A DNA stretch of 64,000 nt, taken from the IMG/VR virus record IMGVR_UViG_3300036770_007547, positions 1 through 64,000 of that record; one strand, 5' to 3'. The position numbers and the translations under genes are program-made. Each line of letters starts with the position of its first letter. The first letter of the stretch is position 1. Below the pieces are notes generated by a model. It saw nothing but the letters and a program-made list of their open reading frames with translations, was not told the DNA's origin and ran no database searches. Below are positions 755 through 64,000 of the stretch, one piece after another.

Positions 755-758
755 GCCC

Positions 759-1571
759 TTATTTAATCGCGGCTCTGAGGCCGTAACTGTGATACAAGTC
801 CTGTGTATGCGTCCAATATTGGTCGATGGCCAAAGGATCCACATTATACCTGTGCTGTAGCCAGTGATCGATATAACCTTGCTGGAGCCAGTTCAGGGCC
901 GGTACTGGCACAGATTCGCCAGCTTCAATGCATTGTAGCATATCTTCCACGGGTTTGTCAATGGAAAAATAGCGATTGTTGGCGCGGAAATGAATCATAA
1001 ATGGTTCGGCTGCCGACGGATCTGAATCGAGTCCAAGATCCGTTAACACATGGTCACACCAGTCGACCACAGATCCATCATAGAAACTTTCAAAGTCCAT
1101 CTCATAGCGCGGTATGATTTGTGTGCTATTTTTTACCCATGACTGGATCGTGGCCCCATCGCGATCAAAAAAGCACAACCGAGCCCAATCACGCAAGGCT
1201 CGATCATTGATTTCTCCGTCGGCGATCCTGCACAAATCGGGCCAGAAAAAACTCATTATGGGATGTGAACCCAGTTTATCTTGTGTGTCCTTGGCCAAAT
1301 CTTCGAGCACGAGATCGCCGCCATTGGTCCTAGAAATGCACATGGCCACATATTTGAGATAACTGCGAGGTGCCACGTTTATCCTGATACAGTCAGCATT
1401 GGTGCCTGTGGAATGATGGATGTCCACAAAAGGTGCCTGGCCCGAATCTACGCTGTCATAGATGGCACCTCGTGGTTGCTGCACTGTATAACCGGCCATG
1501 ACCGATAGCAAACAGCGCAAAAGATTTCCATGAGCACCGCTGGGATAGGTGATATAGATAGGAGCAGTCAC
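759..1571 (-). CDS. hypothetical protein, possibly sulfotransferase-like fold
   Basis: 270-aa ORF; N-terminal YPSGAHGNLL loop; function is a guess. Confidence 0.55.
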   Translation of the reverse strand: MTAPIYITYPSGAHGNLLRCLLSVMAGYTVQQPRGAIYDSVDSGQAPFVDIHHSTGTNADCIRINVAPRSYLKYVAMCISRTNGGDLVLEDLAKDTQDKLGSHPIMSFFWPDLCRIADGEINDRALRDWARLCFFDRDGATIQSWVKNSTQIIPRYEMDFESFYDGSVVDWCDHVLTDLGLDSDPSAAEPFMIHFRANNRYFSIDKPVEDMLQCIEAGESVPVPALNWLQQGYIDHWLQHRYNVDPLAIDQYWTHTQDLYHSYGLRAAIK

Positions 1572-1846
1572 GTCTGCCGCATGGATTCCATGGTTATCAT
1601 CTTGCCCAGTTCGCGATCAAAGTCCTGGTCATCAGTGATGATGTAGTGGCGCTCGTTGCTCTCGTCTCGACGTCGGTCATAGGTACGGAAGCTGACCACG
1701 CTGCCACCTATCACCCGTTTCACCGTGACTCGCAGGCCGTCGCTCCAGGCGGGTGATTCTTCGCAGGTTGTCAGAATCTGAGCCTTTTCTTCTTCGTTGC
1801 GCACGTCTTGTACCCAACGATAGATCCGTCGTTTAAGCCATTTCAT
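1568..1846 (-). CDS. hypothetical phage protein
   Basis: GGAG RBS before MKWLKRR; ATGA coupling to next gene. Confidence 0.7.
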   Translation of the reverse strand: MKWLKRRIYRWVQDVRNEEEKAQILTTCEESPAWSDGLRVTVKRVIGGSVVSFRTYDRRRDESNERHYIITDDQDFDRELGKMITMESMRQT

Positions 1847-1910
1847 CGCTGTCTCCGTGATATATACCTTGTGTAATGTTAACACAAATCAATATGCCAG
1901 TCAACTGATT

Positions 1911-3077
1911 ATGAGCTACGATCCCCGAACCTACTGTTGGTACGCATTCTCGGCCTATGACAGCAATCACAAATACTGCTGCTGTGTGGGTCGCGGCAAT
2001 TACCAAAACTGGACCCAACTCACCCAATCACCAAAGATACTGGAAATACGACAAAGCATCCAGCAGGGCCAACAGCATCCCGATTGCGAGCCGTGCTGGC
2101 GAGCTGAATCACTGGGGGCTGTGAGCACTCGGCAAGGCAGTTTGCAATGGGTGGATCGAACCATGCCCGAGGGTAACTATTATGATCCGCGCCTCAGGGC
2201 TATTTGGTTGGATACCGGCACTGCCTGCAATCTGTCTTGTCGTACTTGTAATGCTGAATGGAGCTCATCACTGGTGCGTGAATTTCGTGATCGATGGCCA
2301 GGCGCCACCCCGCCGCCGGTGCAGCAAGCCGATCTTGACTATTTGTTGGTCGAAGATTTTTCGGATCTACACTCAGTGATTGTCATCGGTGGGGAGCCTT
2401 TCCTGAACATCAAATATGCCGCAGTGTTAGAACGCATGGTTCAGCAGGGGCATGCAGGTCATATCAAAATCACCTCCTTTACCAATGGCACCCATGCCAT
2501 ACCTGCTCGATTGTTGGCACTAGCACCCAATTTTGAAAATTTCAATATTTTGGTCAGCGTGGACGGCGTAGGTCCTGCGTTTGATTACATACGCACCGGT
2601 GGTCGCTGGTCAGAGGTGGACCGAAACATCGGCCAGTTTTTTGATCTCAGAGACCACAACATCCTGGTAATGTTTACCACTGTGATCAGTGCGCTCAATG
2701 TGCTGACACTGCCACGCATCTATGACTATTTCTTGAGTCGTTTCCGAGTGCCCGACATTGGTGGCCCCGCGGAATGGCTGGAAGGTCGGGCCCTCTATCA
2801 AGAGGTTTTGGAGCGCGGGTGGATGGTCAACACTGTGTTACAGCAACCCAGTCATTATACCTTTGAGATGTTCACAGAATCACAGAAACAACAGATACGT
2901 CAGGCCTTGGTGCATCCTTACTATGATTTTGCTCCGGTACTGGCGGCCTTGGACCAGAGTCAACATCGTCCCGAACTGCTGGAGAAATTCTGGCAAGAAG
3001 CAGCTTGGACCCGTCACTATCACGGTCTTCATATCCGAGATCACTTGCCCGAATTGATGGCACTGTTGGAGTCATAA
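1911..3077 (+). CDS. radical SAM protein with N-terminal Cys-rich (twitch/SPASM-like) region
   Basis: CNLSCRTC (CxxxCxxC), GGEPF, TNGT, SVDG; extra Cys in YCW, YCCC, CEPCW. Confidence 0.9.
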   Translation: MSYDPRTYCWYAFSAYDSNHKYCCCVGRGNYQNWTQLTQSPKILEIRQSIQQGQQHPDCEPCWRAESLGAVSTRQGSLQWVDRTMPEGNYYDPRLRAIWLDTGTACNLSCRTCNAEWSSSLVREFRDRWPGATPPPVQQADLDYLLVEDFSDLHSVIVIGGEPFLNIKYAAVLERMVQQGHAGHIKITSFTNGTHAIPARLLALAPNFENFNILVSVDGVGPAFDYIRTGGRWSEVDRNIGQFFDLRDHNILVMFTTVISALNVLTLPRIYDYFLSRFRVPDIGGPAEWLEGRALYQEVLERGWMVNTVLQQPSHYTFEMFTESQKQQIRQALVHPYYDFAPVLAALDQSQHRPELLEKFWQEAAWTRHYHGLHIRDHLPELMALLES

Positions 3078-3101
3078 AAAAGCCTCCATTGCGGAGGCTT
3101 T
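3076..3101 (-). terminator. intrinsic terminator between convergent genes
   Basis: Minus strand AAAGCCTCC-GCAA-TGGAGGCTTTTTT. Confidence 0.8.
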
Positions 3102-3136
3102 GTGCGAGTGCCCTGGGGGACAGGGCAGCGAATCGC

Positions 3137-3403
3137 TTAGACCAGGCCCATGGCGATGGCCTTGTAGCCAGCAGCCACGAGGCGCCGACTGGGCTTGCCG
3201 ATCACATACTCGGTGACCTGTACGCCATTACCGGCCTTGCGGTTGTTGGCATACACAGCGTAGCCAGCGTGACGGATACGGCTGACCTCGGCTGAGAGGT
3301 TCTTGACACCAAACCGCTTGCTGGCGGCTGCGGGAGTCAGTGCTTCACCGTTGTAGAGAGCTTGGAAAACCTTGAAGGTCTTGGTTTCGGGATTGAATCG
3401 CAT
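3137..3403 (-). CDS. small winged-helix DNA-binding protein
   Basis: AAAGGA RBS; HTH-like LTPAAASKRFGVKNLSAEVSRIRHAGY; upstream TTGACA-N17-TATACT. Confidence 0.7.
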   Translation of the reverse strand: MRFNPETKTFKVFQALYNGEALTPAAASKRFGVKNLSAEVSRIRHAGYAVYANNRKAGNGVQVTEYVIGKPSRRLVAAGYKAIAMGLV

Positions 3404-49739: not shown

Positions 49740-51146
49740 TCAACCAGCTTTGATCTTGCCCAAAAGCTGCTTGAGTTTGGCGCTCTGCACTTCGGCAGTG
49801 ACCTTGCCAGTGTCGGGGTTGTCATCATTATCACCGCTGTCGTTGACACGACTGGTGCTCTTGATACTGTCAAGTATGTTGGGTTTACGCACCATCCCGG
49901 TGCTGCCACTCGAATCCTCTTCGCCTAGGTCGCGTATGCGCAAACTGTCGATGTCAAATTCAAGCTCGACTTTCTGCCCCACGCCCGAACTCGATCGTGT
50001 TTTCATGAGCTGTAGCTGATAGCGCCCGCGTTCGCGCATGGCCCGGCTGGTAAAGATACCAAACACATTGTCTGCGGTGTTGATCTTGGAGATACCCCCG
50101 GAAATGTGACTGTGATCAAACTCGATCTCTTCCACGGCTGCTCGATTCAACTGCGATGCTGTGACAAACAGCACATTGAGTTCTTTGGCTAGATTTCTCA
50201 GTTCTTCGCTCACATACTTGTCTTTGACGAACAAGTCGTTGGGCGATACCTTGGCGCTCACGGGCATCAAGAGATCTAGATAATCGATGCACAAGAAATC
50301 CACGCGCATGCCGGTCTGTATCTGCAGTTCTTTGAGATAGGCCCGTATGTCATTCACAGTGCTCTGTGCCGGCATGTACTTGATTCTCAGTTTACCGGCT
50401 TTCTTGGCCAGCATCTTGATCTTCATCTCCACGGTGTCGAGATCTTTGAAGATGTCTCGAGCCGCGGTATTGGTCATCATGCTGTCGATGCGATATCCGC
50501 AGAGGCCTTCTGATAGTTCCAGCGTGATGTACACGCCCGAAAGCCCGGCTTGCGTCCAGTTCACTGCGAGATTTTGCATGAACAGGCTCTTGCCCGAACC
50601 CGAACCACCTGCAAAGATCTGCAGCTCGCCACGATTGAACCCGCCATACAACAGTTTGTCTAGCGCAGGCCATCCTGTGCTGTTCTGTCCGTTGTTGCTC
50701 TTCAAGGACATCAGCCTCGCTCGCGGGTCATCAAAGTAGTCTGTGCCCATGTCTCGAGTGAGAGATATCTGCACAGCATCCTTGATCAGCTTTTCCACGG
50801 GACCAAAGTCACCTTTTTCCAAGAGATCCGCGCTCTTGAGGATGGCACGTTCCAGCTCCTGCCTGCGGGTAAAGGCTTCAAACTCTTCCATGAACCAATC
50901 GAAGTGCCCGTCGTTGAGATCGGGCACTTCGCTCAATCTGATGCCAGTGGCCGCCGAGATCTGCATGCGGTCGGGCATGGTTTTGTGATCGTCGCAGTGC
51001 TGTTTTATGAACAGCGCGGCCGGTCGTAGACTGCGATCAAAGTTTTCGGGATTGTAGATGTTTTGAACACGCACATAGCTCTGTGCGTCCATCAACATCA
51101 TTTCAAGGAACAGTCGTTGCACATCCACACTGTAGTCTTTTAACAC
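49740..51146 (-). CDS. replicative DnaB/gp41-like helicase
   Basis: GGSGSGKS, ITLELSE, IDYLDL, TASQLNR, MKTR. Confidence 0.95.
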   Translation of the reverse strand: MLKDYSVDVQRLFLEMMLMDAQSYVRVQNIYNPENFDRSLRPAALFIKQHCDDHKTMPDRMQISAATGIRLSEVPDLNDGHFDWFMEEFEAFTRRQELERAILKSADLLEKGDFGPVEKLIKDAVQISLTRDMGTDYFDDPRARLMSLKSNNGQNSTGWPALDKLLYGGFNRGELQIFAGGSGSGKSLFMQNLAVNWTQAGLSGVYITLELSEGLCGYRIDSMMTNTAARDIFKDLDTVEMKIKMLAKKAGKLRIKYMPAQSTVNDIRAYLKELQIQTGMRVDFLCIDYLDLLMPVSAKVSPNDLFVKDKYVSEELRNLAKELNVLFVTASQLNRAAVEEIEFDHSHISGGISKINTADNVFGIFTSRAMRERGRYQLQLMKTRSSSGVGQKVELEFDIDSLRIRDLGEEDSSGSTGMVRKPNILDSIKSTSRVNDSGDNDDNPDTGKVTAEVQSAKLKQLLGKIKAG

Positions 51147-51153
51147 AAAGGCC

Positions 51154-52212
51154 TCACTGATAAAGGAATTCTAGGCACCTCTCACCAAATCTCGCTAGAG
51201 CCTGGTTGGTGCGATCTCGATCGAAAAACCACTGTTGATTGTGCCGACATCGGGCATCAATCTCTTCTGGATACTTATATACCGCTTCTGCCAGCTGTCG
51301 CACAGCTTCGGCGGCTGCTTCGGCCCGGCGACGCGTTTTTCGTATACTGTCATAGCCTTCGTCGCAGAAATCATGCCAGGTCTGGAATCCAAGATCTCGC
51401 AATTTCTGCAGGCAGCCTTGATCCCCGAATATCACGAAAGGTCGTGCTTGTGCCAAGGCCTTCCAGGTCTTTTCGGTGAGATAGGGAGTGACTCCATCGA
51501 AGGCCGTGCTTTCCATGACACAGTACACACGGCTCTGTGCAAACATGTCATGATGCGGTAGATGATCCAGGGCCACGTTTTCGTTGCAGTCATAGAACAA
51601 AGGCAGTGCCCGATAGTTTTCAAAACGATCTATGCCCGCTTTGTTGAACCAAACTTCCAGGCCCAGGTCACCGAATCTTAGATTGGTTTCTAAAACATCC
51701 TGGCGATCATCGGTGACCATGCGTAGATCTCGATAGTGTGACAGTATCTCCAGCATCATCTCCCGATGCGGGTGCAAGTTCCCCACTGGGATCACCACAT
51801 CATAGCGGGCCTGGGACACCGAGGTACGATTGACTTCGTTCCACAACACTGCCGACGAGTATCTCTGCTGTGTGATCAAGTCCCAAAAGTCAAAGCCCAG
51901 GCTGCGGTTTCCATTCTCGTGATGCTCGGCATGTTCTTTTCCAGTGATGATCACAGTGTCTCGAGCCTGGTGCAAAGGGAAACAGTGGAAAGCATGACCT
52001 TCAAACACATTGCCCCACTGTTTCCAGGCAGTAGGATCTTGTCCGCGCCAATCTCTAAACACCGGGCCCCCGGGCTGATCAGAAATCGCTAGATCAGCGA
52101 ATCGTTGCTGTCGGCTGTGCATGGCAGCGATGCCGGCATAGATCCAGCTCTGTGTGTAAAGCCCCCAGTCGGGATTCTGTTGTTTGAGATAGGTCAGCGA
52201 CGTCAGTTTCAT
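51154..52212 (-). CDS. GT10-like glycosyltransferase, paralog 3
   Basis: VMES...LTEKTWKA...PFVIFG...GFQTW...DEGYD. Confidence 0.6.
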   Translation of the reverse strand: MKLTSLTYLKQQNPDWGLYTQSWIYAGIAAMHSRQQRFADLAISDQPGGPVFRDWRGQDPTAWKQWGNVFEGHAFHCFPLHQARDTVIITGKEHAEHHENGNRSLGFDFWDLITQQRYSSAVLWNEVNRTSVSQARYDVVIPVGNLHPHREMMLEILSHYRDLRMVTDDRQDVLETNLRFGDLGLEVWFNKAGIDRFENYRALPLFYDCNENVALDHLPHHDMFAQSRVYCVMESTAFDGVTPYLTEKTWKALAQARPFVIFGDQGCLQKLRDLGFQTWHDFCDEGYDSIRKTRRRAEAAAEAVRQLAEAVYKYPEEIDARCRHNQQWFFDRDRTNQALARFGERCLEFLYQ

Positions 52213-53189
52213 TGGCGCATCCATTTTTTGCGCGATATTTCGATGCGTATGCGCGAAGTCTGTCGATGTTGCATGATCATCATCACTGTGGCCAAGCGAC
52301 CCATGACCTTGACAGCATCGTTGACATCTTTGCAACCCTCGGGCCATTCAGGCATGCTCACAGCCCAGCCCAGTTCCAGGGCGCGGTCCACCAACTTCAT
52401 ACCAGCTTCGTCCTGATCGGGAACCACAGTGATCTCGCGCCCCAGGCTGCGTATCAGTCGCGCCTGCGCATCATTGATCTCGGCATGCAACACAGCCAAA
52501 CCAGAAATGCTGAGTGCATCAAACACTCCTTCCATCACGATCGCATGTTGCCAGTCGGGTCGTTGCAGGTCCGTGCCAAACACATAGCCTGACTGCATGT
52601 CATGGATGTAGCGAGGATTGTGATCATCGAAGAATCTGCGAGTGTGTCCCACTATGCGTCCATCATAGGTAAAAGGTATGATCACTCCTTGCCTGCGCCT
52701 AAATTTGTCACCGGGTTCACCAGTGATCATGCCACAGGGGTAATCCTCGGGCACATGCCTGTCGCGGAGATACTGCCAGTGTATGGGCATGTTCTCATCA
52801 ACGAGAGAAAAGTCTGGTGGTAAATCGCGATCTTCAAACTCTATGCCTTGCAAGATGTTGGCTGTGCGTTGACGGTCATCCAGGATACCCATCACGCTTT
52901 TGTGGCGCAGGCTTTCGAGATTGATGCGTTCGATCTCTTCTTGGGGCACGTTCAACCATGTCAGTAGTCGTCGTGCTTTGAAACTGAGATTCCTGCCCAG
53001 GATGAACGACGCAGTGAAGCCACAGTTGAAACAGTGATAGCTCCAACCTTGGTCTGTGGTCTTGACACCGCCGCGCTGACGTCGATCAGCGCTTTCGCCG
53101 TTGTGTACGCAACAGGGTGCGTTGAAGCTCACCCAACCTGATGCTGTGGATTTTTTCTTGCCAACGATGTATGGGAGTAAATCAATCAC
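52209..53189 (-). CDS. DNA primase (gp61-like)
   Basis: Zn finger PCC...HCFNC; TOPRIM EGVFDA, PDQDEAG, KDVND. Confidence 0.93.
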   Translation of the reverse strand: MIDLLPYIVGKKKSTASGWVSFNAPCCVHNGESADRRQRGGVKTTDQGWSYHCFNCGFTASFILGRNLSFKARRLLTWLNVPQEEIERINLESLRHKSVMGILDDRQRTANILQGIEFEDRDLPPDFSLVDENMPIHWQYLRDRHVPEDYPCGMITGEPGDKFRRRQGVIIPFTYDGRIVGHTRRFFDDHNPRYIHDMQSGYVFGTDLQRPDWQHAIVMEGVFDALSISGLAVLHAEINDAQARLIRSLGREITVVPDQDEAGMKLVDRALELGWAVSMPEWPEGCKDVNDAVKVMGRLATVMMIMQHRQTSRIRIEISRKKWMRQ

Positions 53190-54723: not shown

Positions 54724-55101
54724 ATGGGCGAAAACATTTTAAAAACATTGAGCGAACGCTACCCCTTCATGACCATATGTGTTCATGCTGGAAACGAATA
54801 CATCGGGATCATACAAAACCGAGACGAAACAGTGACCACCTTGTATGACTTTGGTGCCATAACCAGCGAGCCTTTGAAGGAAGCCTATCTCGAACTGGCC
54901 TCGGATTGGTGGTGGGAAAGCAATCACAGCATACCCATAAACATTTTCCTCAAAACAGAATGGGACCCTTTCCGTTTCTGTCTGCGCACATTCAGCAACA
55001 AGGACCTAGAAATAATACACGGGCCTGTTTGCAGCATCAATGACATCAGTCGCCGGCGCAGTAAACGTCGCAGCATCACGCTGGTGCGTTATTCAGACTG
55101 A
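54724..55101 (+). CDS. hypothetical phage protein
   Basis: YPFMT, WWWESN..IPINIFL; TATAAATA upstream. Confidence 0.75.
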   Translation: MGENILKTLSERYPFMTICVHAGNEYIGIIQNRDETVTTLYDFGAITSEPLKEAYLELASDWWWESNHSIPINIFLKTEWDPFRFCLRTFSNKDLEIIHGPVCSINDISRRRSKRRSITLVRYSD

Positions 55102-55652
55102 TCCAACAAGTTCATGTGCAGGGCCACCAAATGGGCATAGCCCAGGGCATGGCTTTTCTTGAACACGAAACCGCGACTGTGATCACCGTCCCATACCGAA
55201 GCAAACACTTGGTCCCAGGGCTGATTCTGTAGATGTGCCTTGCCCGGGCGTATCACGGATATAAAAGCCGCCATGCGTGGTATAGAATCTGGTCGCATGG
55301 ATGCCAAGAGAGCATCATAATTTCCAATGTGTGCGATTTTCTCGGCCCAGACCGGATCTTTCCATAACCTCTGCCAGTTTGGTTCGCGATCCATCATGGC
55401 TTGATAGTGTTCGGCATCTCGCACCAGCTGATACACGCTCATGTTCAAGAGATCGATCTTGAAGTACCCGCGGCGATCGGCTTCGTCATAGGTGATGCTG
55501 GCACATCCGTTCACAGCATCATAGGGTATCCCGGTCACATACACACCGCTGTTGTGGTGTCGTCCGCTGGCGTCCAGCCTCGCAGGTATGCACCTCACAA
55601 GGTCAATCACTTGTTGTCGATCTGCTAGATCGATGTCAATGTCTGCGCTCAT
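55089..55652 (-). CDS. minimal family-C DNA polymerase (DnaE palm-like) protein
   Basis: ADIDID, HNSGV, FKIDLL, IRPG, FKKSHALGY in 187 aa. Confidence 0.8.
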   Translation of the reverse strand: MSADIDIDLADRQQVIDLVRCIPARLDASGRHHNSGVYVTGIPYDAVNGCASITYDEADRRGYFKIDLLNMSVYQLVRDAEHYQAMMDREPNWQRLWKDPVWAEKIAHIGNYDALLASMRPDSIPRMAAFISVIRPGKAHLQNQPWDQVFASVWDGDHSRGFVFKKSHALGYAHLVALHMNLLDQSE

Positions 55653-56350
55653 TACCAACCGGCCTTGGACAAAATTTCTCGAGCATATTCACGATCAGCG
55701 GGATATTCACGGAATCTGCGATCCCAGTAGTCAGCATCGATCCAGGGCCATATCATGGTCAGTTGCTCGGGATTGATGCGATTGAGATATCCTTGCCCGC
55801 TTTCACAATTATACAGCACCCAGGCACTGATGCGACCAGTGGTGATGGCAAAGGCGATGGCGTTGTCGTTGCCAAATCTCAGATAGTCGTGTGCGGGATT
55901 TTCAGTGTCATCTTGCCAACACATGCCATGCTCCACGGCTCGGGACAAGGCATCGTTGACATGCTCGGTTCGCAGATACTGGTACAACCACTCGCTGTAA
56001 ATGCTGTCTCGGCACCAATGATCGAGTTTTTTGTTTTCGCGTATCAACCAGTCAGTGAATCTGGGCACATTGATGGCTCGTATTTTCTGACAGTGACGGC
56101 CAAACTTCACGAAGGCACGATAATACGACGAGGCCGCGAAGTCTTCCCAGTTGCGGCTGCGACAACTACCTTGCGTGATTTCATAGAATCTCTGATAGGC
56201 CTTGAGCCCGATGTTTACCCCCACTTCGTCGCGTTCTTGATGTCGACGTTTGGGTTCGCACATGTGAACCAGCAGACTGCCTTCGCGCCGGAAACTGCGC
56301 TGGCAATGCTGGCACTGATACTCAGTCGTTGGCGCCGTGATCGCGTTCAT
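55652..56350 (-). CDS. protein with N-terminal C2H2-like zinc finger
   Basis: YQCQHCQRSFRREGSLLVHMC. Confidence 0.75.
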   Translation of the reverse strand: MNAITAPTTEYQCQHCQRSFRREGSLLVHMCEPKRRHQERDEVGVNIGLKAYQRFYEITQGSCRSRNWEDFAASSYYRAFVKFGRHCQKIRAINVPRFTDWLIRENKKLDHWCRDSIYSEWLYQYLRTEHVNDALSRAVEHGMCWQDDTENPAHDYLRFGNDNAIAFAITTGRISAWVLYNCESGQGYLNRINPEQLTMIWPWIDADYWDRRFREYPADREYAREILSKAGW

Positions 56351-56768
56351 ATTCTCGCAGTTCTCGGGCATCGATCATGGAAGCAAGAGTCTCGATGTCA
56401 TTGATCTTCCAGGCCGGGAACAAGTTCATCAATCTTTTTTTGACATCGTTGGCCGACTTCTTGTCGTCGCGACCTCGCAGCTTGATGTACTGATGATCAA
56501 ACGCTCCCAGGCCGGGACTCACTGCCGTGGCCGACAACCATTGCAGTTTTGGATGTCGATTTATGGCAAAAAAGTTTCGATTGAGATGATAGTTGGTGCT
56601 TTGTACATAGTACTCCTGCATGTCTTGGCTGGCAGAAACTGTGCTGCCCCAGCGTATCATTAGATAGTTGGAGAATCGCTTGCGTTCTTCGTCGGTGAGT
56701 TCGTCGTAGAATCCGCGATTCTTGCGATCCAACTGCGTCATCTCGTTGCGTATGTGTAGTTTATCCAT
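56322..56768 (-). CDS. clamp-loader small subunit (gp62)-like protein
   Basis: FSNYLMIRW..S, N, HPKLQW pattern; replication-cluster context. Confidence 0.5.
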   Translation of the reverse strand: MDKLHIRNEMTQLDRKNRGFYDELTDEERKRFSNYLMIRWGSTVSASQDMQEYYVQSTNYHLNRNFFAINRHPKLQWLSATAVSPGLGAFDHQYIKLRGRDDKKSANDVKKRLMNLFPAWKINDIETLASMIDARELREYERDHGAND

Positions 56769-56981: not shown

Positions 56982-57482
56982 CTACCAGGCCTTGCTGTAG
57001 TCAACGATCTCGCAGTTGCGTGATATGTCCCGAACGAAATACACACACTCGGGCTCGGGATCGTCGTTGATAGGCACTGCCAAGATTTGACCGTTCTTGA
57101 GCTTGGGCGCATACCATGTCACTTCGTGATAGATGTCCACGATCTCGATGTCAGGGAAACTGGGCCGGAAACTTGACAATGGATTGAATTGGAAGGCCTT
57201 GAATCCTCGGTCATTGATCGATGTCAAAGGCAGCATTTCTAGATCTCCGAGATCGGGTTCTCCTATCAAGATCTGCCAATCCACGGGCATGCTCACGATG
57301 TCTTGATTGATCCTCAACACCAGTGCCGGAGCATTGAAGCTCTCCAAGAAGATCAAAGGAATGTAGTGATAGTCGGGATTGCCGGGATCGCTGTTGTCCA
57401 GGATGGCAAATCTCATGTCATCGATCTTGTCCGGCAGTGTGTCGAGGTCATAAGCGATGTTGTCTAGGGTCAGTATCTTCAT
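56982..57482 (-). CDS. hypothetical all-beta phage protein
   Basis: Start MKILTL, 7 nt after TTGACA-N17-TACAAT. Confidence 0.8.
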   Translation of the reverse strand: MKILTLDNIAYDLDTLPDKIDDMRFAILDNSDPGNPDYHYIPLIFLESFNAPALVLRINQDIVSMPVDWQILIGEPDLGDLEMLPLTSINDRGFKAFQFNPLSSFRPSFPDIEIVDIYHEVTWYAPKLKNGQILAVPINDDPEPECVYFVRDISRNCEIVDYSKAW

Positions 57483-57514
57483 TCTAGTTATTGTAGATGG
57501 TGATTGACGAAATG

Positions 57515-58972
57515 TCAATTCCATTCCAACCTTTCTTGTGTGAATGGATATTCGGCTTCACGATAGTAGGCTTTCCTCTTGGTGAGATGTCGTTTCGCAA
57601 ATTTGCATGTACTTGTTATGTCCCAGATCTGCACAAAGTCTTTGTCTTCGGCCTTGCGGATTCCACGTCCGATTGACTGGATGACTCGCACAAAACTCTT
57701 GCCAGGTTCCACCAGCACGAGATTAAAGATCCTGGGGATGTTGATGCCCACAGCGGCCACGCCATAGGTTGCGACAATGATTTTATCTGTTGCCTCCGCC
57801 ACCGAGTCATAATGATCCTGCCTTTCCCCGGCCTTGGTACCGCCGGATATGAATACCGCATTTGTGAGACGTGACACCAGCTCTTGTCCGGCCGCGATAC
57901 GATCCACCAACACCAGAGTGTTGCCAGTTTCGTTGACACGCTGTATGAGTTCGGCCATGGTGTCCAATCTACCAGGTTCTTCTAACAGGTACTTGAGCTC
58001 GCTCTGATAGTTGTTGTACTCCACATGATCCACCAACTGCACCACATTGACATGGCACTGGGCCAACACACCTTGCTCTTGCAGTTCCACTGCGGCCAGT
58101 CGGTTGATGACTGGCCCGATACTGACTTCAAGGGCACGGCTTTCAAACTGTTCTTTGGGTATGGTTCCGGTCAAACCCCACCTGATCGGCACTTGCGACA
58201 TCACGCCCGTGAGCAAGGTCTTGAGCGCATCGGCCTTGGCCATGTGTACCTCGTCCACGATCACACAGATCACACCTTCCAGGAATTCTCCGATGGTGAT
58301 GTCGGCCACTTGGTTGCGTGTGTTTTTTAACAGCACATTGAGGCTCTGCCAAGTGCAGATGGTATGCTGGTGTCCAAACTCTTTCCTGTCACCAAAGAAC
58401 ACGCCCACATCTAACTGCATGTTGCGATAGTCTTTCTCGGTCTGTGTGACAAGACTCTTGTTGGGCACGATCACGATGCTACGACCATGGCGCTCTACTC
58501 GCTGGCTCAGGGCCGCGGTCATGATGGTCTTGCCAGCACCTGTGGCCACCTCTTGCAGGCACTGCGGCGTGGACAAAAACGAGTTGATGATCTTGACTTG
58601 ATAGTCTCTGAGTCGTATGGGCTCACCGGCCGCGGGATGATTGGCGGGCCATGATATGTGAGCGAAGCTGTCTTCGTTGACACTGTCAAATTCAAAAAAG
58701 GTGGGATAATCTCGACGATCATCGAGCTCGATATCGTAGTCAAGGCTTTCCAATATTGGAAGTATCTCCGGCAAGAGATTGACATAGGTGCTACCGCCCA
58801 TCTGGAAATAGCTGACCTTGCCGTCCCAACGGCCCAGTCTCACAGCCGGGAGATATCGAGCATAAGGCACATCGTATTTGAACTGGTTGACCAGTCGTCG
58901 ACGTGCGTCGAGATCCAGTCCTTCGATTTTGACGTTGACTTCGTCGTGTATGATTAGAGTGGCCTGGCGCAT
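57515..58972 (-). CDS. uvsW: SF2 DNA helicase, UvsW-like
   Basis: LRDYQ, ATGAGKT, DEVH, GLTGT, QSIGRGIR. Confidence 0.9.
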   Translation of the reverse strand: MRQATLIIHDEVNVKIEGLDLDARRRLVNQFKYDVPYARYLPAVRLGRWDGKVSYFQMGGSTYVNLLPEILPILESLDYDIELDDRRDYPTFFEFDSVNEDSFAHISWPANHPAAGEPIRLRDYQVKIINSFLSTPQCLQEVATGAGKTIMTAALSQRVERHGRSIVIVPNKSLVTQTEKDYRNMQLDVGVFFGDRKEFGHQHTICTWQSLNVLLKNTRNQVADITIGEFLEGVICVIVDEVHMAKADALKTLLTGVMSQVPIRWGLTGTIPKEQFESRALEVSIGPVINRLAAVELQEQGVLAQCHVNVVQLVDHVEYNNYQSELKYLLEEPGRLDTMAELIQRVNETGNTLVLVDRIAAGQELVSRLTNAVFISGGTKAGERQDHYDSVAEATDKIIVATYGVAAVGINIPRIFNLVLVEPGKSFVRVIQSIGRGIRKAEDKDFVQIWDITSTCKFAKRHLTKRKAYYREAEYPFTQERLEWN

Positions 58973-60490: not shown

Positions 60491-61297
60491 TCAGGGGTTG
60501 AGACTGCGCAGATACTCTTCGCCCTCGTCGTCTACCATGTCCAACCAATAGTCGCCATTGGTGATGTCGATGTTTCCGGGCACGGCCTTGAGGGCCCGAT
60601 ACCATTGTCCTTGATAACGCACCGTGTCATTTTCGTTGTAGAATTGCCAACGGCTCCACACCGGCAAGGGCAGAGTGCGCCACGAACTCATGGTGCTGGT
60701 GGGCACATTTGCCTCTACATCACGAATGGCCATGACCATGACACCACGTGCGTCCCTGACCACAGTACCTGCGATGTAACTGGTGGTTGAGTTCCACTCG
60801 GGCATGTCAACACCGGGTTGCCAGCGCATGTCACATGTGAACACATCACCGTCTTGCAGAGTGTACACCCATTGTCCCAGGGTCTCGGATGTACGGATCA
60901 GCGACACTGGTGTTCCATTGATGGCAGCGTTTGCCCGCGGATCCGCACAGAATCCCTGGGGGGTCATCTCAGCATAAAAAGCACTGTAGGTGCCGTCGCC
61001 GCCGCTGACCATGGAAGGTATTTCGTGTTCGTAGTTGATGTGGATATAATTGGCCACGCTGCCGTACAACGTGAGCATGCCGCCGGTGACAGTGATCTCG
61101 TAGGGCTCGCTGCCCTGGCTAGCGATGTCTTTGGTCCAGGACCAGAGAACGCTGTTGTATTGCGTGCCCGGTGCCGGGGTCGAATTTACCGTGGGCACTG
61201 TGCCATCAAAAATAACGGTGCCACCCAGTTTTACAGTGCATCTCACCGGGTTTGAGCCGTGTCCGGTGCCTAGTTCACGGAATGTTCGTGTTGTCAT
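60491..61297 (-). CDS. protein with two C-terminal CBM5/12-like modules
   Basis: WNSTTSYIAGTVV and YNENDTVRYQGQWYRA; CATAAATA upstream. Confidence 0.7.
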   Translation of the reverse strand: MTTRTFRELGTGHGSNPVRCTVKLGGTVIFDGTVPTVNSTPAPGTQYNSVLWSWTKDIASQGSEPYEITVTGGMLTLYGSVANYIHINYEHEIPSMVSGGDGTYSAFYAEMTPQGFCADPRANAAINGTPVSLIRTSETLGQWVYTLQDGDVFTCDMRWQPGVDMPEWNSTTSYIAGTVVRDARGVMVMAIRDVEANVPTSTMSSWRTLPLPVWSRWQFYNENDTVRYQGQWYRALKAVPGNIDITNGDYWLDMVDDEGEEYLRSLNP

Positions 61298-61333
61298 TGT
61301 GCGATTCTCCAGTGCTGTATTTATGGCTGATTT

Positions 61334-62110
61334 TCAACACCAATATCTAGCCATAAAATCATCGTGGATTTCGTGTGGTTTGGGCTGTCCGTGGAATATC
61401 ACCAATCGTGTGTCGGGAGGAAGTATGCTGCCGCCTCCGGGACGAAGATAGGTGCGGGTTTTCATGTCCATGCCGCCTTCGCGCACTTGCCAGCGCCAGC
61501 TTCGTGCCACGCCATCATCAAAGAATCGCCGGACATCGGGCGTGAGATACGAGGTCATGTAGTCTTGATCACCGGGATATTTGCGCATGATATTGCCGAG
61601 CTGATGCTGCCGAAACGCTTTCCAGATATGCGGGAAGAACTCGGTGTCCCAGTACATCACCGAACTGTTCATACCCTGCCAATTTGGGCGCCAGAGATAG
61701 CGGAAGTCGCGTATGGTCCAGAAATACCGGGGACTCAGAGCCGTGATCCAGTCCAGATTGCCGGTGATGACCACGTCTAGATCCAGATAAAACATGCGTC
61801 CATGGAAATGCCGGGGATCAAACATCTGCATCTTGTACCACCAAGCTCGCTTGGGCCCGCTCACATTGCTCCAGATTTCGAGATCGTGGCGTATCATGTG
61901 TCCGGGCACCGGGCGTTCGGGTTCGGTAAACACATGCATGCGGATGGGATAGGAAAAATTCCGCTCCAGCATGCTGTGTAGTTTTTCCACGTATTCCCAA
62001 CCATACATGTCGCCGTGTATCACACAGGCGCAATCGATGCCATTGTTGGGATCGCGCAGTTCGGTGGGCGTCAATCTTTCGAGAGCTTTCCTGCCAGCCT
62101 TTTTAGCCAT
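61334..62110 (-). CDS. GT-A glycosyltransferase (GT8-like)
   Basis: WWYK, YLDLDVV, NSSVM, GDQDY, FHGQPKP. Confidence 0.85.
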   Translation of the reverse strand: MAKKAGRKALERLTPTELRDPNNGIDCACVIHGDMYGWEYVEKLHSMLERNFSYPIRMHVFTEPERPVPGHMIRHDLEIWSNVSGPKRAWWYKMQMFDPRHFHGRMFYLDLDVVITGNLDWITALSPRYFWTIRDFRYLWRPNWQGMNSSVMYWDTEFFPHIWKAFRQHQLGNIMRKYPGDQDYMTSYLTPDVRRFFDDGVARSWRWQVREGGMDMKTRTYLRPGGGSILPPDTRLVIFHGQPKPHEIHDDFMARYWC

Positions 62111-62931
62111 AGTCCTTGTCTAATCTCTTCTACTGTGTATTCGGTGTGACTGATCTCGATCAACCATTGATTCCGATCAGGCACTTCGGCATCTTCGATG
62201 TCTGCTATACTTATTGATACCGGATGTGCCAGGCTGGACTGATCCACAACAACGGGTGATCCGCGCAATGCAGCCTGTATGCCCACTCCACTGTTGTAAT
62301 TTATCACGGCGTGATAGTCAAACTTGAGATCGTAGGTGTCATACGTGGTGGGGAGTCTGCGCGGACTTTCGATGCGAACATCTCCTGCATAATTTATGCG
62401 TTTGTGATTGATGCGGCTGCGCGGGTGTGGTCGTATCACCACTGGACGGTCTGTGTATCTTCGCAGCTCTTGTATGGTGGAATTGATCCAGGATTCCTGG
62501 CTGACCATGCTGTCGGTCTGCAGACTCTGTTGATGCTGTGAAGCTATCAATATCGCGGGGTTGGTCTGTGATGTTTCAAACAAGGCCAAGCCCAGTTGTT
62601 CGGGTCTTTTGGCATCGAGATCTTCGGTGTGTCCATAATAACCATCGGCCGTGATGTTGTTGATGGCCACCTTCCAAGTGGTGCCACGATGCAGAGCGCC
62701 CACATCGACCACGATCACAGGACGGCCTTGATCGACATAGTGTTTGTAAACCGATTGATTGGGTTTCATCCTTCCGTGCCACAGCACGCTCCATATCACG
62801 GCAGCATCAGCATCATAAGAACCGTCCACGGTTCTGATACCGGCCGCCCGTGCGCTGTCCAACAGAGCTGACATGGCACTGCCGCTGTTCTGTGCGCATT
62901 GGAAAGGAAAATAGGCTAAGGTTTCGATCAC
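62071..62931 (-). CDS. KpsS/capsule-synthesis-like GT-B protein
   Basis: IRPHP, NYNSGVGIQAAL.G.PV. Confidence 0.6.
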   Translation of the reverse strand: MIETLAYFPFQCAQNSGSAMSALLDSARAAGIRTVDGSYDADAAVIWSVLWHGRMKPNQSVYKHYVDQGRPVIVVDVGALHRGTTWKVAINNITADGYYGHTEDLDAKRPEQLGLALFETSQTNPAILIASQHQQSLQTDSMVSQESWINSTIQELRRYTDRPVVIRPHPRSRINHKRINYAGDVRIESPRRLPTTYDTYDLKFDYHAVINYNSGVGIQAALRGSPVVVDQSSLAHPVSISIADIEDAEVPDRNQWLIEISHTEYTVEEIRQGLWLKRLAGKLSKD

Positions 62932-62969
62932 TAAATATCCTCGGTGGTATCGTTTAATTATTCATTGTC

Positions 62970-63824
62970 ATGGCATCTACAGCAATTAACTGGACCTATC
63001 TCAGCAAAAAAGGCGAGGACGAGTACATCAATCGACTGGCGCACAGCGCCGGTGTCGAGCCCACGGCCATCGAAAACTGGAACTATGGTGTCTGTCCCGA
63101 TCACGGATTGGTGTTGCGTGGCATAATGAAACACAAAATCATGAAACAGTGCTGGCATGATCGTAGACCTTTTCGATACATGGACACCGGATATTTTGGC
63201 AATGCCAAGAGCACTCGTAATCCCAGCGGATTCAAGCTGTGGCATCGCATCGTGGACAATGATCTGCAACATGGAAACTTGGTGGTCAAACGTCCGTTGG
63301 ATCGCTGGGAACAGCATGGTATACCTGTACATGCCCGCCGGCATGGCAGTAAAATCTTGGTTGTTGCGCCCGATGAGAAACCATGCTTGTTCTATGACAC
63401 CACCTTGGAAACCTGGTTGGACAACACAGTGTCGCGCATCAAACAACACACCGATCGTCCCATCGAAATCCGACATCGAGCACGCGATGCTGTCAAAAAC
63501 AATCGCACCAAAGACAAGAGCTTTGACGCTGCACTGGAAGATGATGTGGCCGCGGTGGTCACTTTCAATTCCACTGCCGCGGTGCACAGCGTGATCCGCG
63601 GCGTACCAGTGTATGTCACTGCGCCCACCAATGCAGCCGAGCCGGTGGCCAACGGTGATCTGAGCTCGATCGATGCTCCGGGATTTCCCGATCGTGACGA
63701 AATCATGGCCTGGCTGGCGCATCTCGCTTACGGTCAGTTCCATGTACGCGAACTTGAAAATGGCACTGCCATCAGATTGCTGGAAGAAACACAATATCTA
63801 ATCAAAAGAGGACTACAGTCTTGA
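62970..63824 (+). CDS. KpsS/capsule-synthesis-like GT-B protein
   Basis: DTGYF, VTFNSTAAVHSVIRGVPV. Confidence 0.6.
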   Translation: MASTAINWTYLSKKGEDEYINRLAHSAGVEPTAIENWNYGVCPDHGLVLRGIMKHKIMKQCWHDRRPFRYMDTGYFGNAKSTRNPSGFKLWHRIVDNDLQHGNLVVKRPLDRWEQHGIPVHARRHGSKILVVAPDEKPCLFYDTTLETWLDNTVSRIKQHTDRPIEIRHRARDAVKNNRTKDKSFDAALEDDVAAVVTFNSTAAVHSVIRGVPVYVTAPTNAAEPVANGDLSSIDAPGFPDRDEIMAWLAHLAYGQFHVRELENGTAIRLLEETQYLIKRGLQS

Positions 63825-64000
63825 CCTATACCATCGTTACCACGTTTCATGAACCCGGCTTGCAAAAATACGCACAACGCATGATCGACACCTTTGATCG
63901 ATATTGGCCACAGGATGTGAAACTGCGTGCCTATGCCGAAGACTGCGATCCCATGTCACCCAGTGATCGTATTGAAATTTTTGATTTGCACGAATGCTGT
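63821..64000 (+). CDS. probable glycosyltransferase, 5' part (truncated)
   Basis: TTG start overlapping prior stop; MTYTIVTTFHEPGLQKYAQRMIDTF..YWP open to window end. Confidence 0.55.
   Translation, partial: MTYTIVTTFHEPGLQKYAQRMIDTFDRYWPQDVKLRAYAEDCDPMSPSDRIEIFDLHECC

What the first reader, a model, noticed from the sequence alone, without database searches (positions are those of the whole stretch)
55089..55652. 187-aa mini-DnaE keeping all three catalytic aspartates
Seen in order: ADIDID, HNSGV, FKIDLL, RP..IRPG and FKKSHALGY. These match DnaE PDIDxD, HAxG, KxDxLG, RPG and FNKSHxxAY. Established: DnaE is over 1000 aa with PHP, thumb, fingers and OB domains. Here these domains are missing or internally deleted, not simply truncated. 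The start is coupled (TAATG) to the zinc-finger gene in a replication operon. Inference: a stripped palm with a new role, or one subunit of a split polymerase completed by neighbouring small proteins.
Basis: partly seen in the sequence, partly recalled or inferred. Interest (0 to 1): 0.68.

Follow-up and report, generated by a model that had tools for sequence, protein, structure and literature searches.

The report
Half of a split mini-DnaE polymerase
The 187-residue gene is real and conserved: it is the catalytic-aspartate half of a two-gene, stripped-down version of the bacterial replicative polymerase (Pol III alpha) that a large group of jumbo phages carries; this was predicted by computer in 2021, and I found no experimental study of it.

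Summary
Window 55089-55652 (minus strand) encodes a 187-aa protein with DxDxD, HxxG, KxD, RPG and FKKSH in DnaE order. Its ATG overlaps the stop of the upstream C2H2 gene (TAATG).

It is not a decaying fragment. It matches phrog_11778 ("DNA polymerase", E 5e-52) and has 5,694 relatives at 90% clustering. The motif residues are invariant, and dN/dS is about 0.10.

An AlphaFold model (pLDDT 91.6) aligns over 183 of 187 residues with Pol III alpha (Z 9.4; E. coli residues 399-779). About 200 residues are deleted internally, including the thumb and a finger segment.

The kind is already described. Iyer et al. 2021 (PMC7824862) reported a minimal Pol III alpha in group 2.2 jumbo phages. It is split into an N-terminal NTP-binding unit and a C-terminal Mg/template unit, encoded by distant genes, beside a family B polymerase. 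This gene is the C-terminal unit.

The partner (about 170 aa, GRGSSVAS motif, ending where this protein begins) is not a neighbour. In related phages it lies 33-138 kb away.

It is absent from this 222-kb, 64%-complete record. Colinearity with a relative places it about 30 kb beyond the contig start.

A predicted complex with a relative's N-unit scores 0.91, against 0.37 for the best control.

Verdict: a new member of a known, biochemically untested kind.

The parts
55089..55652 (-). C-terminal (Mg2+- and template-binding) unit of a split minimal Pol III alpha, 187 aa
   Evidence: Matches phrog_11778 at E 5e-52. AF2 model has pLDDT 91.6. VIA-align gives Z 9.4, rmsd 3.7, with 183 of 187 residues aligned to Taq Pol III alpha 460-836 / E. 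coli 399-779. dN/dS is about 0.10.
55629..55643 (-). Codons for D4-I-D6-I-D8, equivalent to E. coli DnaE D401/D403/D405 (the first two are catalytic)
   Evidence: Invariant in 35 diverse homologues. HMMER aligns it with Mtb DnaE1 413-424, MPDIDIDF. All 153 homologues examined start 2-18 residues before this motif.
55545..55556 (-). Codons for H33-N-S-G36, equivalent to the DnaE HAGG strand that follows the thumb; the thumb itself is replaced by a short loop
   Evidence: H33 and G36 are invariant. The codons were read from the sequence. The equivalence to HAGG is by motif order and the structural span (inference).
55452..55460 (-). Codons for K65-I-D67, equivalent to E. coli K553/D555 (third catalytic aspartate)
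   Evidence: K65 and D67 are invariant. The equivalence rests on motif order within the structural alignment to E. coli 399-779.
55239..55250 (-). Codons for R135-P-G-K138 (DnaE fingers RPG motif)
   Evidence: R135, P136 and K138 are invariant. HMMER aligns residues 114-141 with Mtb DnaE1 638-665.
55149..55163 (-). Codons for F164-K-K-S-H168 (DnaE FNKSH motif)
   Evidence: F164 and H168 are invariant. HMMER aligns residues 162-177 with Mtb DnaE1 773-788. In the predicted complex, residues 165-168 touch the partner's GRGSSVAS loop.
55652..56371 (-). 239-aa C2H2 zinc-finger protein, with its stop codon overlapping the C-unit start (TAATG); a conserved upstream neighbour
   Evidence: Pfam zf-C2H2 at E 2e-4, below the cut-off. 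phrog_11058 at E 9e-50. It holds the same position in PAC2/PA5oct-type phages. Only viral hypothetical relatives were found.
56322..56768 (-). 148-aa conserved neighbour of unknown function
   Evidence: phrog_11758 at E 1.5e-14. A 'coil containing protein' sits at the same position in PAC2.
56982..57524 (-). 180-aa conserved neighbour of unknown function
   Evidence: phrog_11279 at E 5e-47. Only viral hypothetical look-alikes were found.
57515..58972 (-). UvsW-like SF2 DNA helicase at the head of the co-directional gene string
   Evidence: Pfam ResIII 1e-19, Helicase_C 7e-9, and UvsW_N 3e-3 (weak). phrog_16 at 1e-72. Annotated UvsW at the same position in PAC2.
54724..55101 (+). 125-aa convergent gene that overlaps the C-unit 3' end by 13 nt
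   Evidence: phrog_11637 at E 1e-31. The same convergent overlap is seen in PAC2 and in the metagenomic relative L005.
52209..53189 (-). DNA primase
   Evidence: phrog_47 at E 9e-29.
49740..51146 (-). DnaB-like replicative helicase
   Evidence: phrog_19 at E 1.5e-68.

Best explanation
The gene encodes the C-terminal half of a two-polypeptide, minimal C-family (Pol III alpha / DnaE-like) nucleotidyltransferase typical of one large group of jumbo phages.

Shown here:
- The protein begins exactly at the beta-strand that carries the two metal-binding aspartates (D4, D6).
- It keeps the third aspartate (D67) and the lysine before it.
- It keeps two finger elements (RPG, FKKSH).
- It has lost the PHP domain, the thumb, about 85 residues of the fingers, and everything C-terminal of E. 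coli residue ~780.

Shown in relatives:
- A separate ~170-aa protein supplies the preceding part of the palm (E. coli 279-393), including the GRGSSVAS nucleotide-phosphate-binding loop.
- In all 85 copies examined it ends 25 residues after that loop, so the two genes abut at E. coli residues ~394-398.

Inferred:
- The two chains assemble without covalent joining into one Pol-beta-type palm, with the active site lying at the interface between the GS loop, DxD, KxD and KSH.
- The heterodimer adds nucleotides to a DNA 3' end. It probably serves as an accessory to the phage's family B replicase (repair, recombination-dependent synthesis, or extension on one strand), as Iyer et al. suggested.

In this phage the partner gene, and the PolB gene, should lie beyond the left end of the incomplete contig.
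For: Family membership:
- phrog_11778 at E 5e-52.
- 96 cultured jumbo phages carry a homologue (PA5oct 41% identical, plus RaK2/GAP32/PBECO4 types). Several records annotate it 'DNA polymerase III alpha'.
- The UvsW ... C2H2 - C-unit - primase - DnaB synteny is conserved.

Literature:
- Iyer et al. 2021 describe exactly this split minimal Pol III alpha beside a PolB in group 2.2 jumbo phages.

Fold:
- The model has pLDDT 91.6.
- Foldseek's top 13 hits are all Pol III alpha.
- VIA-align gives Z 9.4 with 183/187 residues aligned to E. coli 399-779.

Partner:
- Sharanji gp285 / phrog_11127 ends ...GRGSSVASY...EFLKW.
- Its model aligns to E. coli 279-393 at Z 9.3-10.7 in the E. coli entries (best hit overall is Mtb DnaE1 307-413, Z 11.7).
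- All 85 N-units end 25 aa after the motif.
- All 153 C-units start 2-18 aa before DxDxD.

Co-occurrence:
- Both units are present, one match to each, in all 15 large related records searched.

Binding:
- The predicted complex of the window C-unit with the relative G001's N-unit scores ipSAE 0.91, against 0.37 for the best of 3 controls. That mark was reached by 58 of 80 solved complexes and by 2 of 110 mismatched pairs.
- The runs agree in at least 97% of contacts, and the partner's pLDDT is at least 88.
- C-unit residues 2-10 and 165-168 contact N-unit residues 131-144.

Selection:
- Median dN/dS is 0.10 over 52 unsaturated pairs.

The missing partner is explained by truncation:
- G001 0-100 kb is colinear (inverted) with this record from 98 kb down to 0.6 kb.
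- G001's N-unit sits at 132 kb and its PolB at 173 kb, which places both beyond this contig's start.
Against: - No biochemical or genetic data were found for any member, so polymerase activity is an inference.
- The cognate N-unit and PolB of this phage are not in the 222-kb record. Their existence here is extrapolated from relatives.
- The complex was modelled with a partner from a related phage whose C-unit is 69% identical. It may also score high because single-chain Pol III alpha structures are in the predictor's memory.
- By motif spacing, the region between RPG and FKKSH is about 85 residues shorter than in DnaE. From my own recollection of the E. coli sequence, the lost segment includes the conserved YQEQ and RRAMGKK finger motifs. 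There is no thumb, clamp-binding motif, HhH or OB domain. Processive, templated synthesis may therefore need other factors, or may not occur at all.
- Sequence-level similarity of the C-unit to cellular DnaE is weak: Pfam PF07733 gives no hit, and the PDB profile's best E is 0.014.
Confidence: 0.8

Rival explanations
1. The heterodimer is a nucleotidyltransferase but not a templated DNA polymerase. It might do untemplated 3' tailing, make a signalling or modified nucleotide, or take part in DNA modification. On this view the DnaE palm is reused as a generic Pol-beta-type catalytic core.
For: The thumb, about 85 finger residues, the clamp-binding region and the OB domain are all missing. A complete family B replicase is present in relatives, so no second replicase is needed. 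Pol-beta-fold cores are widely reused for non-polymerase chemistry (general knowledge).
Against: The DnaE-specific finger elements RPG and FKKSH are retained and invariant, and they are not part of the generic Pol-beta core. Both halves sit among replication genes: helicases and primase for the C-unit, the clamp loader for the N-unit.
Confidence: 0.15
2. The 187-aa protein works on its own, or together with its immediate small neighbours (the C2H2 protein and the 148-aa and 180-aa proteins). The distant N-unit is not required.
For: The start is translationally coupled to the C2H2 gene. The neighbour set is conserved from this clade to PA5oct.
Against: - The protein lacks the GS nucleotide-binding loop and the helices before it.
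- The neighbours show no DnaE similarity in Pfam or PHROG, and only viral hypothetical look-alikes.
- The N-unit fits the break point to within about 5 residues.
- The N-unit co-occurs with the C-unit in 15 of 15 large records.
- The N-unit is confidently predicted to dock on the DxD strand.
- Neighbours acting as accessory factors are not excluded.
Confidence: 0.04
3. It is a decaying remnant of a captured full-length dnaE gene.
For: It is very short compared with DnaE's >1000 aa, and it gets no Pfam hit.
Against: - 5,694 cluster representatives of similar length were found.
- Catalytic and finger residues are invariant across clades only 34-50% identical to the window protein.
- dN/dS is about 0.10, with synonymous sites saturated against the nearest relatives.
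- Start position and synteny are uniform.
- The predicted fold is compact and of high confidence.
Confidence: 0.01
4. The two halves are joined after translation by a split intein, as in cyanobacterial DnaE.
For: Naturally split DnaE genes joined by trans-splicing inteins exist in cyanobacteria. Every paper found for 'split DnaE' concerns those inteins.
Against: There is no room for intein fragments. The N-unit stops 25 residues after GRGSSVAS at EFL[RK]. The C-unit has only 2-18 residues before DxDxD. Together they cover E. coli 279-393 and 399-779 with no extra domain at the junction.
Confidence: 0.01

Closest known systems
Split minimal DNA polymerase III alpha of group 2.2 jumbo phages (Iyer, Anantharaman, Krishnan, Burroughs and Aravind 2021, Viruses 13:63; PHROGs 11778 for the C-unit and 11127 for the N-unit)
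   Same: Same family by profile (E 5e-52). The architecture is the same: it starts at the DxD strand and carries the Mg2+/template-binding half. It occurs in the same kind of host, a jumbo phage. The replication-gene context matches that of PA5oct/PAC2. The partner N-unit and a PolB are present in close relatives.
   Different: It is only about 40% identical to the cultured-phage members, and belongs to a large environmental clade whose members are 66-76% identical to it. In this clade the two genes lie about 87-119 kb apart, against 33-44 kb in RaK2-like phages and PA5oct. In this record the partner is not assembled.
Bacterial replicative polymerase alpha subunit DnaE / PolC (C-family; PDB 2hnh, 2hpi, 3e0d, 5lew)
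   Same: It has a Pol-beta-type palm with the same three aspartates, the HxGG strand, K-x-D, and the RPG and FNKSH finger motifs in the same order. The structural alignment covers 183 of 187 residues (Z 9.4).
   Different: It has no PHP domain, no thumb, only part of the fingers, and no beta-clamp motif, HhH, OB or tau-binding domain. The palm is divided between two polypeptides. It gets no Pfam PF07733 match. Activity is unknown.
Full-length DnaE-like polymerases of phages (for example Bacillus phage G, SPbeta-like phages and Streptomyces phages; group 3.2 of Iyer et al.)
   Same: They are phage-encoded C-family enzymes. The N-unit still finds them by tblastn (27-35% identity).
   Different: Those are single chains with a PHP domain and resemble host enzymes. 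According to Iyer et al. they serve as the main replicase.
Intein-split DnaE of cyanobacteria (Ssp/Npu DnaE)
   Same: The DnaE is encoded by two separate genes.
   Different: In cyanobacteria the full-length enzyme is restored by protein trans-splicing, and the split lies at a different site. Here there are no intein fragments, and the two halves presumably stay separate chains.

Membership tests
Split minimal Pol III alpha of jumbo phages, C-terminal unit (phrog_11778; Iyer et al. 2021) | Sequence match to the family profile over its full length | tested here: met
   phrog_11778 at E 5.3e-52, residues 3-185 against profile positions 7-193 of 197.
Split minimal Pol III alpha of jumbo phages, C-terminal unit (phrog_11778; Iyer et al. 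2021) | Contains the Mg2+-chelating acidic residues and the template-binding part of the Pol III alpha core, and begins at the DxD strand | tested here: met
   D4, D6, D8, K65, D67, RPG and FKKSH are invariant. The fold aligns to E. coli 399-779. All 153 homologues start 2-18 aa before DxDxD.
Split minimal Pol III alpha of jumbo phages, C-terminal unit (phrog_11778; Iyer et al. 2021) | A separate, distantly encoded N-terminal NTP-binding unit in the same genome | tested here: inconclusive
   It was not found in the 222,775-bp, 64%-complete record. It was found in 15 of 15 large related records. Colinearity places it about 30 kb beyond this contig's start.
Split minimal Pol III alpha of jumbo phages, C-terminal unit (phrog_11778; Iyer et al. 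2021) | Accompanied by a family B DNA polymerase | tested here: inconclusive
   PF00136 is absent from this record. It is present as an ~890-aa ORF in relatives G001, G006 (complete, 344 kb), G007 and G008, downstream of the N-unit. It was not found in the fragment G002.
Split minimal Pol III alpha of jumbo phages, C-terminal unit (phrog_11778; Iyer et al. 2021) | Physical association of the two units | tested here: inconclusive
   This rests on prediction only: ipSAE 0.91 against 0.37 for the best control, using the N-unit of a related phage. No experiment was done.
Bacterial DnaE/PolC alpha subunit (Pfam PF07733 DNA_pol3_alpha plus the PHP domain) | Match to the PF07733 palm/thumb/fingers model | tested here: not met
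   Pfam gave no hit on the protein at E<=1. A six-frame search of the whole record gave no hit at E<=10.
Bacterial DnaE/PolC alpha subunit (Pfam PF07733 DNA_pol3_alpha plus the PHP domain) | N-terminal PHP domain, thumb, complete fingers, clamp-binding and OB domains in one chain of more than 900 aa | tested here: not met
   The protein has 187 aa. It aligns only within E. coli 399-779, with about 200 residues of that span missing.
Bacterial DnaE/PolC alpha subunit (Pfam PF07733 DNA_pol3_alpha plus the PHP domain) | Catalytic triad of aspartates on the Pol-beta-type palm | tested here: met
   D4, D6 and D67 are invariant. HMMER aligns the first motif with Mtb DnaE1 MPDIDIDF.
Bacterial DnaE/PolC alpha subunit (Pfam PF07733 DNA_pol3_alpha plus the PHP domain) | Template-directed DNA polymerase activity | not testable with these tools
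   This needs a primer-extension assay of the reconstituted pair.
Intein-split DnaE | Intein N- and C-fragments at the break point | tested here: not met
   The N-unit ends 25 aa after the GS motif. The C-unit starts 2-18 aa before DxDxD. The structural spans abut at E. coli 393/399.

The most novel reading that the evidence does not exclude
The ~360-residue heterodimer (this protein plus the distant N-unit) could be a fully active, template-directed C-family DNA polymerase. It would be by far the smallest of its class. It could work at the phage fork or in recombination-dependent replication beside PolB, perhaps recruited by the conserved C2H2, 148-aa and 180-aa neighbours in place of the missing thumb, clamp-binding and OB modules. 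As Iyer et al. speculated, it might preserve something like the ancestral form of the bacterial replicase core, rather than being a reduced copy.
Probability: 0.35. Interest if true: 0.75.

Novelty: new member of a known kind. Interest (0 to 1): 0.35.

Why it matters
C-family polymerases replicate bacterial chromosomes, and every characterised one is a chain of more than 900 residues. A conserved, abundant ~360-residue two-chain version would define the minimal catalytic core of this class. There are thousands of clusters in metagenomes, and it is present in therapeutic-candidate phages such as PA5oct and in RaK2-like phages.

It would also give a tractable model for how the palm and fingers work without the thumb, PHP and clamp-binding modules. 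It bears on whether the bacterial replicase grew from a small nucleotidyltransferase. For phage biology, it raises the question of why phages with a complete PolB replisome keep a second, unrelated polymerase core.

- the exact and universal break point (E. coli residues ~394-398);
- a map of what is deleted;
- strong purifying selection;
- strict co-occurrence of the two units;
- different conserved neighbourhoods for the two halves;
- a controlled complex prediction that places the active site at the interface between the subunits.

Tried and rejected
- **Single-sequence searches of the C-unit.** Pfam gave nothing. phmmer against the PDB gave only a chance hit. PF07733 against the whole record gave nothing.
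- **DNA similarity.** Megablast of 10 kb around the gene against the phage collection gave no match, so no close cultured relative exists there.
- **Looking for the N-unit in this record.**
  - GS-motif regular expressions over all ORFs found nothing credible.
  - Searches with the Sharanji protein, the phrog_11127 profile, and tblastn with the PA5oct, Sharanji, G001 and G002 N-units and their neighbours found nothing.
  - Two N-units hit the same weak spot at 66.2 kb (E 0.24 and 1.9). It lies in an alternative frame of a 549-aa gene, so I rejected it as chance.
- **Records and files not held.** The 342-kb ENA contig that carries a 71%-identical homologue could not be searched. The supplement of Iyer et al. 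is not held, so their accession lists could not be compared.
- **Neighbour proteins.** Atlas look-alike searches for the C2H2 and 180-aa neighbours returned only viral hypothetical proteins. Pfam and PHROG scans of other nearby ORFs were mostly empty.
- **Hypotheses rejected.** Intein trans-splicing and the pseudogene reading are both rejected (see rivals).
- **Not done.**
  - The large representative search, which was not needed.
  - The read-mapping tools, which were not used.
Full report
**The observation.**
Window 55089-55652 holds an open reading frame on the minus strand. It runs from the ATG at 55652 to the TGA at 55089-55091 and encodes 187 residues.
- ADIDID at residues 3-8
- HNSGV at 33-37
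- FKIDLL at 64-69
- RP at 120-121 and IRPG at 134-137
- FKKSHALGY at 164-172

The start codon shares one base with the TAA stop of the upstream 239-aa C2H2 gene. Plus-strand 55650-55654 reads cat/tta, which is TAATG on the coding strand.

**Family and distribution.**
Pfam finds nothing in the protein. PHROGs places it in phrog_11778, annotated "DNA polymerase", over its full length at E 5e-52.

A translated search of the phage collection finds it in 96 jumbo phages, at 35-41% identity. These include PA5oct and its relatives, RaK2, GAP32, CBB, PBECO4/121Q and Erwinia and Xanthomonas jumbo phages. Some records call it "DNA polymerase III alpha" or "DNA polymerase", and others call it hypothetical.

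The large protein collection holds 5,694 cluster representatives with E<=1e-3. The nearest are 66-76% identical and come almost entirely from metagenomes.

The window is the first 64 kb of a 222,775-bp IMG/VR viral record that CheckV estimates to be 64% complete. No cultured phage is close at the DNA level.

**What the literature says.**
Iyer, Anantharaman, Krishnan, Burroughs and Aravind (Viruses 2021, PMC7824862) reported the following for their "group 2.2" jumbo phages. [quoted passage not shown] They suggest it may cooperate with PolB in synthesis of one strand or in repair, and may model the ancestral enzyme.

So the kind of object is already described, by computation only. I found no later paper with experiments on it. 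Searches for "split DnaE" and similar terms returned only intein papers, and a 2026 review of jumbo phages does not mention it.

**Which half is this, and where is the other?**
The window protein starts three residues before DxDxD, so it is the C-terminal (metal and template) unit.

The N-terminal unit was identified first in Escherichia phage Sharanji (gp285, 172 aa, annotated DNA polymerase III DnaE). It ends ...GLGRGSSVASY...EFLKW, which is the DnaE GRGSxAGS nucleotide-phosphate loop. It stops just short of the PDxDxD strand. It belongs to phrog_11127 and still detects full-length phage DnaE proteins by sequence.

In PA5oct the two genes are 44 kb apart. In Sharanji they are 30 kb apart.

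**The partner is not in this record.**
Several searches failed to find it:
- the Sharanji protein as query
- the phrog_11127 profile
- tblastn with four different N-units and their neighbours
- motif searches over all ORFs

Two N-units gave weak hits at 66.2 kb. These fall in a wrong frame of a long gene, so I discard them.

**Close relatives have the partner.**
Records G001 (176 kb) and G002 (149 kb) carry C-units 69-70% identical to the window's. Both encode an N-unit about 100 kb downstream of the C-unit.

The complete 344-kb relative G006, which has terminal repeats, carries all three genes:
- C-unit at 152 kb
- N-unit at 257 kb
- an 889-aa PolB at 291 kb

A translated dot-plot shows G001 0-100 kb colinear, in inverted orientation, with this record from 98 kb down to 0.6 kb. 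G001's N-unit (132 kb) and PolB (173 kb) therefore map beyond the left end of this contig. The absence of both genes here is most simply truncation of the assembly.

**The two units co-occur.**
I chose ten further large records (81-100% complete) through one unit. The other unit was found in all ten, as one match per record. The spacing between the two genes is 33 kb in RaK2-like phages and 87-138 kb in the environmental clades.

**Structure.**
An AlphaFold2 model built on 35 diverse homologues has mean pLDDT 91.6 and pTM 0.82.

Foldseek's 13 best PDB matches are all Pol III alpha chains, from Taq, E. coli and M. tuberculosis DnaE1. Probability reaches 1.00 and the best E is 7e-3.

VIA-align gives Z 9.4, rmsd 3.7 A, with 183 of 187 residues aligned to Taq 460-836. 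This corresponds to E. coli 399-779 and Mtb 418-807. The best unrelated fold scores Z 3.9.

The 187 residues are thus spread over a 381-residue span of E. coli DnaE. By motif order:
- the thumb between the DxD strand and the HxGG strand is replaced by a short loop (residues ~26-32);
- the stretch between RPG and FNKSH is about 85 residues shorter than in DnaE1 (one search gives the anchor points 638-665 and 773-788);
- nothing beyond E. coli residue ~780 is present.

From my own recollection of the E. coli sequence, the lost finger segment includes the YQEQ and RRAMGKK motifs. This was not verified with a tool.

A profile of the alignment finds Pol III alpha in 9 of its 10 PDB sequence hits, with four colinear motif matches. 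The E-values are only 0.014 and worse.

The N-unit model (pLDDT 86.1) aligns over residues ~71-170 to Mtb DnaE1 307-413 and E. coli 279-393. Z is 11.7 and rmsd 2.5 A, and nothing unrelated scores above Z 2.1. The two proteins therefore cover E. coli 279-393 and 399-779, abutting within about five residues.

The break point is uniform:
- all 85 N-units examined end exactly 25 residues after GRGSSVAS, in EFL[RK];
- all 153 C-units begin 2-18 residues before DxDxD, most of them 2-6 residues before.

This leaves no room for intein fragments.

**Do the halves bind?**
- The score (ipSAE) was 0.91 as the median of three runs. The best of 3 controls scored 0.37.
- In the tool's calibration that mark was reached by 58 of 80 solved complexes and by 2 of 110 mismatched pairs.
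- The runs agree in at least 97% of contacts, and the partner's pLDDT is at least 88.
- The confident contacts join C-unit residues 2-10 (the DxDxD strand) and 165-168 (KKSH) to N-unit residues 131-144 (the WGVGRGSSVAS loop). That is the geometry expected if the two chains rebuild one Pol-beta-type palm with the active site at their interface.

Three caveats apply. The partner comes from a related phage, not this one. My own alignments were used, so the calibration counts hold only roughly. Single-chain Pol III alpha structures may let the predictor score this from memory. The result supports binding but does not show it.

**Selection.**
The following residues are invariant across 35 sequences that are 34-73% identical to the window protein: D4, D6, D8, H33, G36, P43, A58, K65, D67, Y74, W93, A128, R135, P136, K138, W154, F164, H168 and Y172.

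I calculated Nei-Gojobori dN/dS on 81 coding sequences of the window's own clade. The median is 0.10 (interquartile range 0.09-0.13, maximum 0.24) over the 52 pairs whose synonymous distance is not saturated. Against the window's nearest relatives, synonymous sites are saturated (pS ~0.8) while pN is ~0.2.

**Context.**
The C-unit closes a co-directional string of genes:
- UvsW-like helicase, 57515-58972
- a 180-aa protein
- a 72-aa coiled-coil protein
- a 148-aa protein
- the C2H2 protein
- the C-unit

Further along the minus strand lie the primase (52209-53189, phrog_47) and a DnaB-like helicase (49740-51146, phrog_19). A 125-aa gene on the opposite strand overlaps the C-unit's 3' end.

The same arrangement is seen in Pseudomonas phage PAC2 and in a metagenomic relative. 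The small neighbours have only viral, unannotated relatives.

The N-unit has a different conserved neighbourhood: N-unit, a small unknown gene, a GroES-like gene, then the clamp loader. This holds in PA5oct, Sharanji and G001. So both halves sit among replication genes, but in different modules.

**Mechanism.**
Shown:
- a compact palm plus partial fingers of C-family type, carrying the complete acidic triad;
- a separate partner gene that supplies the nucleotide-binding loop;
- strict co-occurrence of the two, and purifying selection.

Inferred:
- The two chains form a non-covalent heterodimer of about 360 residues.
- This heterodimer binds a dNTP between the GS loop and the DxD/KxD metals and adds it to a DNA 3' end.
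- The RPG and FKKSH helices help hold the template or nascent base pair.
- The thumb, clamp-binding motif, HhH and OB modules are absent, and relatives carry a full PolB with clamp and clamp loader. An accessory role is therefore more likely than a role as the main replicase. It could act in repair, in recombination-dependent replication near UvsW, or in short extension on one strand.
- A non-polymerase nucleotidyltransferase activity cannot be excluded.

**Verdict.**
The phenomenon was published in 2021 and is carried in PHROG and GenBank annotations.

This locus is a new, divergent member from an abundant environmental jumbo-phage clade. Its partner lies off the end of the assembly. The open question is whether the enzyme is active and what it does. 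That question belongs to the whole family and needs bench work.

Noticed in passing
window 51154-52347 (-): An ORF of up to 397 aa with no Pfam or PHROG match lies between the primase and DnaB genes. Those two genes are directly adjacent in PAC2 and in the metagenomic relative L005. As listed, the ORF overlaps the primase 3' end by 139 nt, so its true start is probably a later methionine. It looks like a lineage-specific insertion into the replication module.
   Followed up: partly
window 54724-55101 (+): A 125-aa gene (phrog_11637, unknown function) converges on the C-unit and overlaps its last 13 nt. The same convergent overlap is conserved in PAC2/PA5oct-type phages and in relative L005. 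This suggests a functional or regulatory link.
   Followed up: partly
L087:1489-1998 (N-unit of relative G001), residues 1-70: The first ~70 residues of the N-unit are conserved within the family (for example MxxNKFGE at the start) but align to nothing in Pol III alpha. They may be an extra domain that stands in for a lost module. In the predicted complex, residues 1-9 and 64-76 touch the C-unit.
   Followed up: partly
L005:9627-10004: In one 71%-identical relative, a 125-aa DUF3307 gene is inserted between the C2H2 gene and the C-unit. The TAATG coupling seen in the window is therefore not universal.
   Followed up: no
window 60491-64000 and on to G000 ~70200: A run of genes without Pfam matches includes at least five paralogue-like proteins that share a C-terminal 'DRP(I/V)xxRxHP' segment. 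They are at 62071-62931, 62970-63824, 65173-66084, 66092-67741 and 68523-70184. The run is interspersed with a methyltransferase-like ORF and a nucleotidyltransferase-like ORF. It looks like a sugar or polysaccharide modification island, and it is much less conserved in relative G001.
   Followed up: no
The N-unit profile (phrog_11127) also detects DnaE in 8-10 of 14 control bacterial genomes. The C-unit profile (phrog_11778) detects none. So the two halves have diverged from cellular DnaE to very different degrees, which explains why annotation pipelines often name only the N-unit.
   Followed up: partly
G000 1-3300 against G001 ~100 kb: The window begins at the physical end of the contig. 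Colinearity with G001 stops there, so roughly 120 kb of this phage is unassembled. By analogy with relatives, the missing part includes the clamp loader, the GroES-like gene, the N-unit and PolB.
   Followed up: yes
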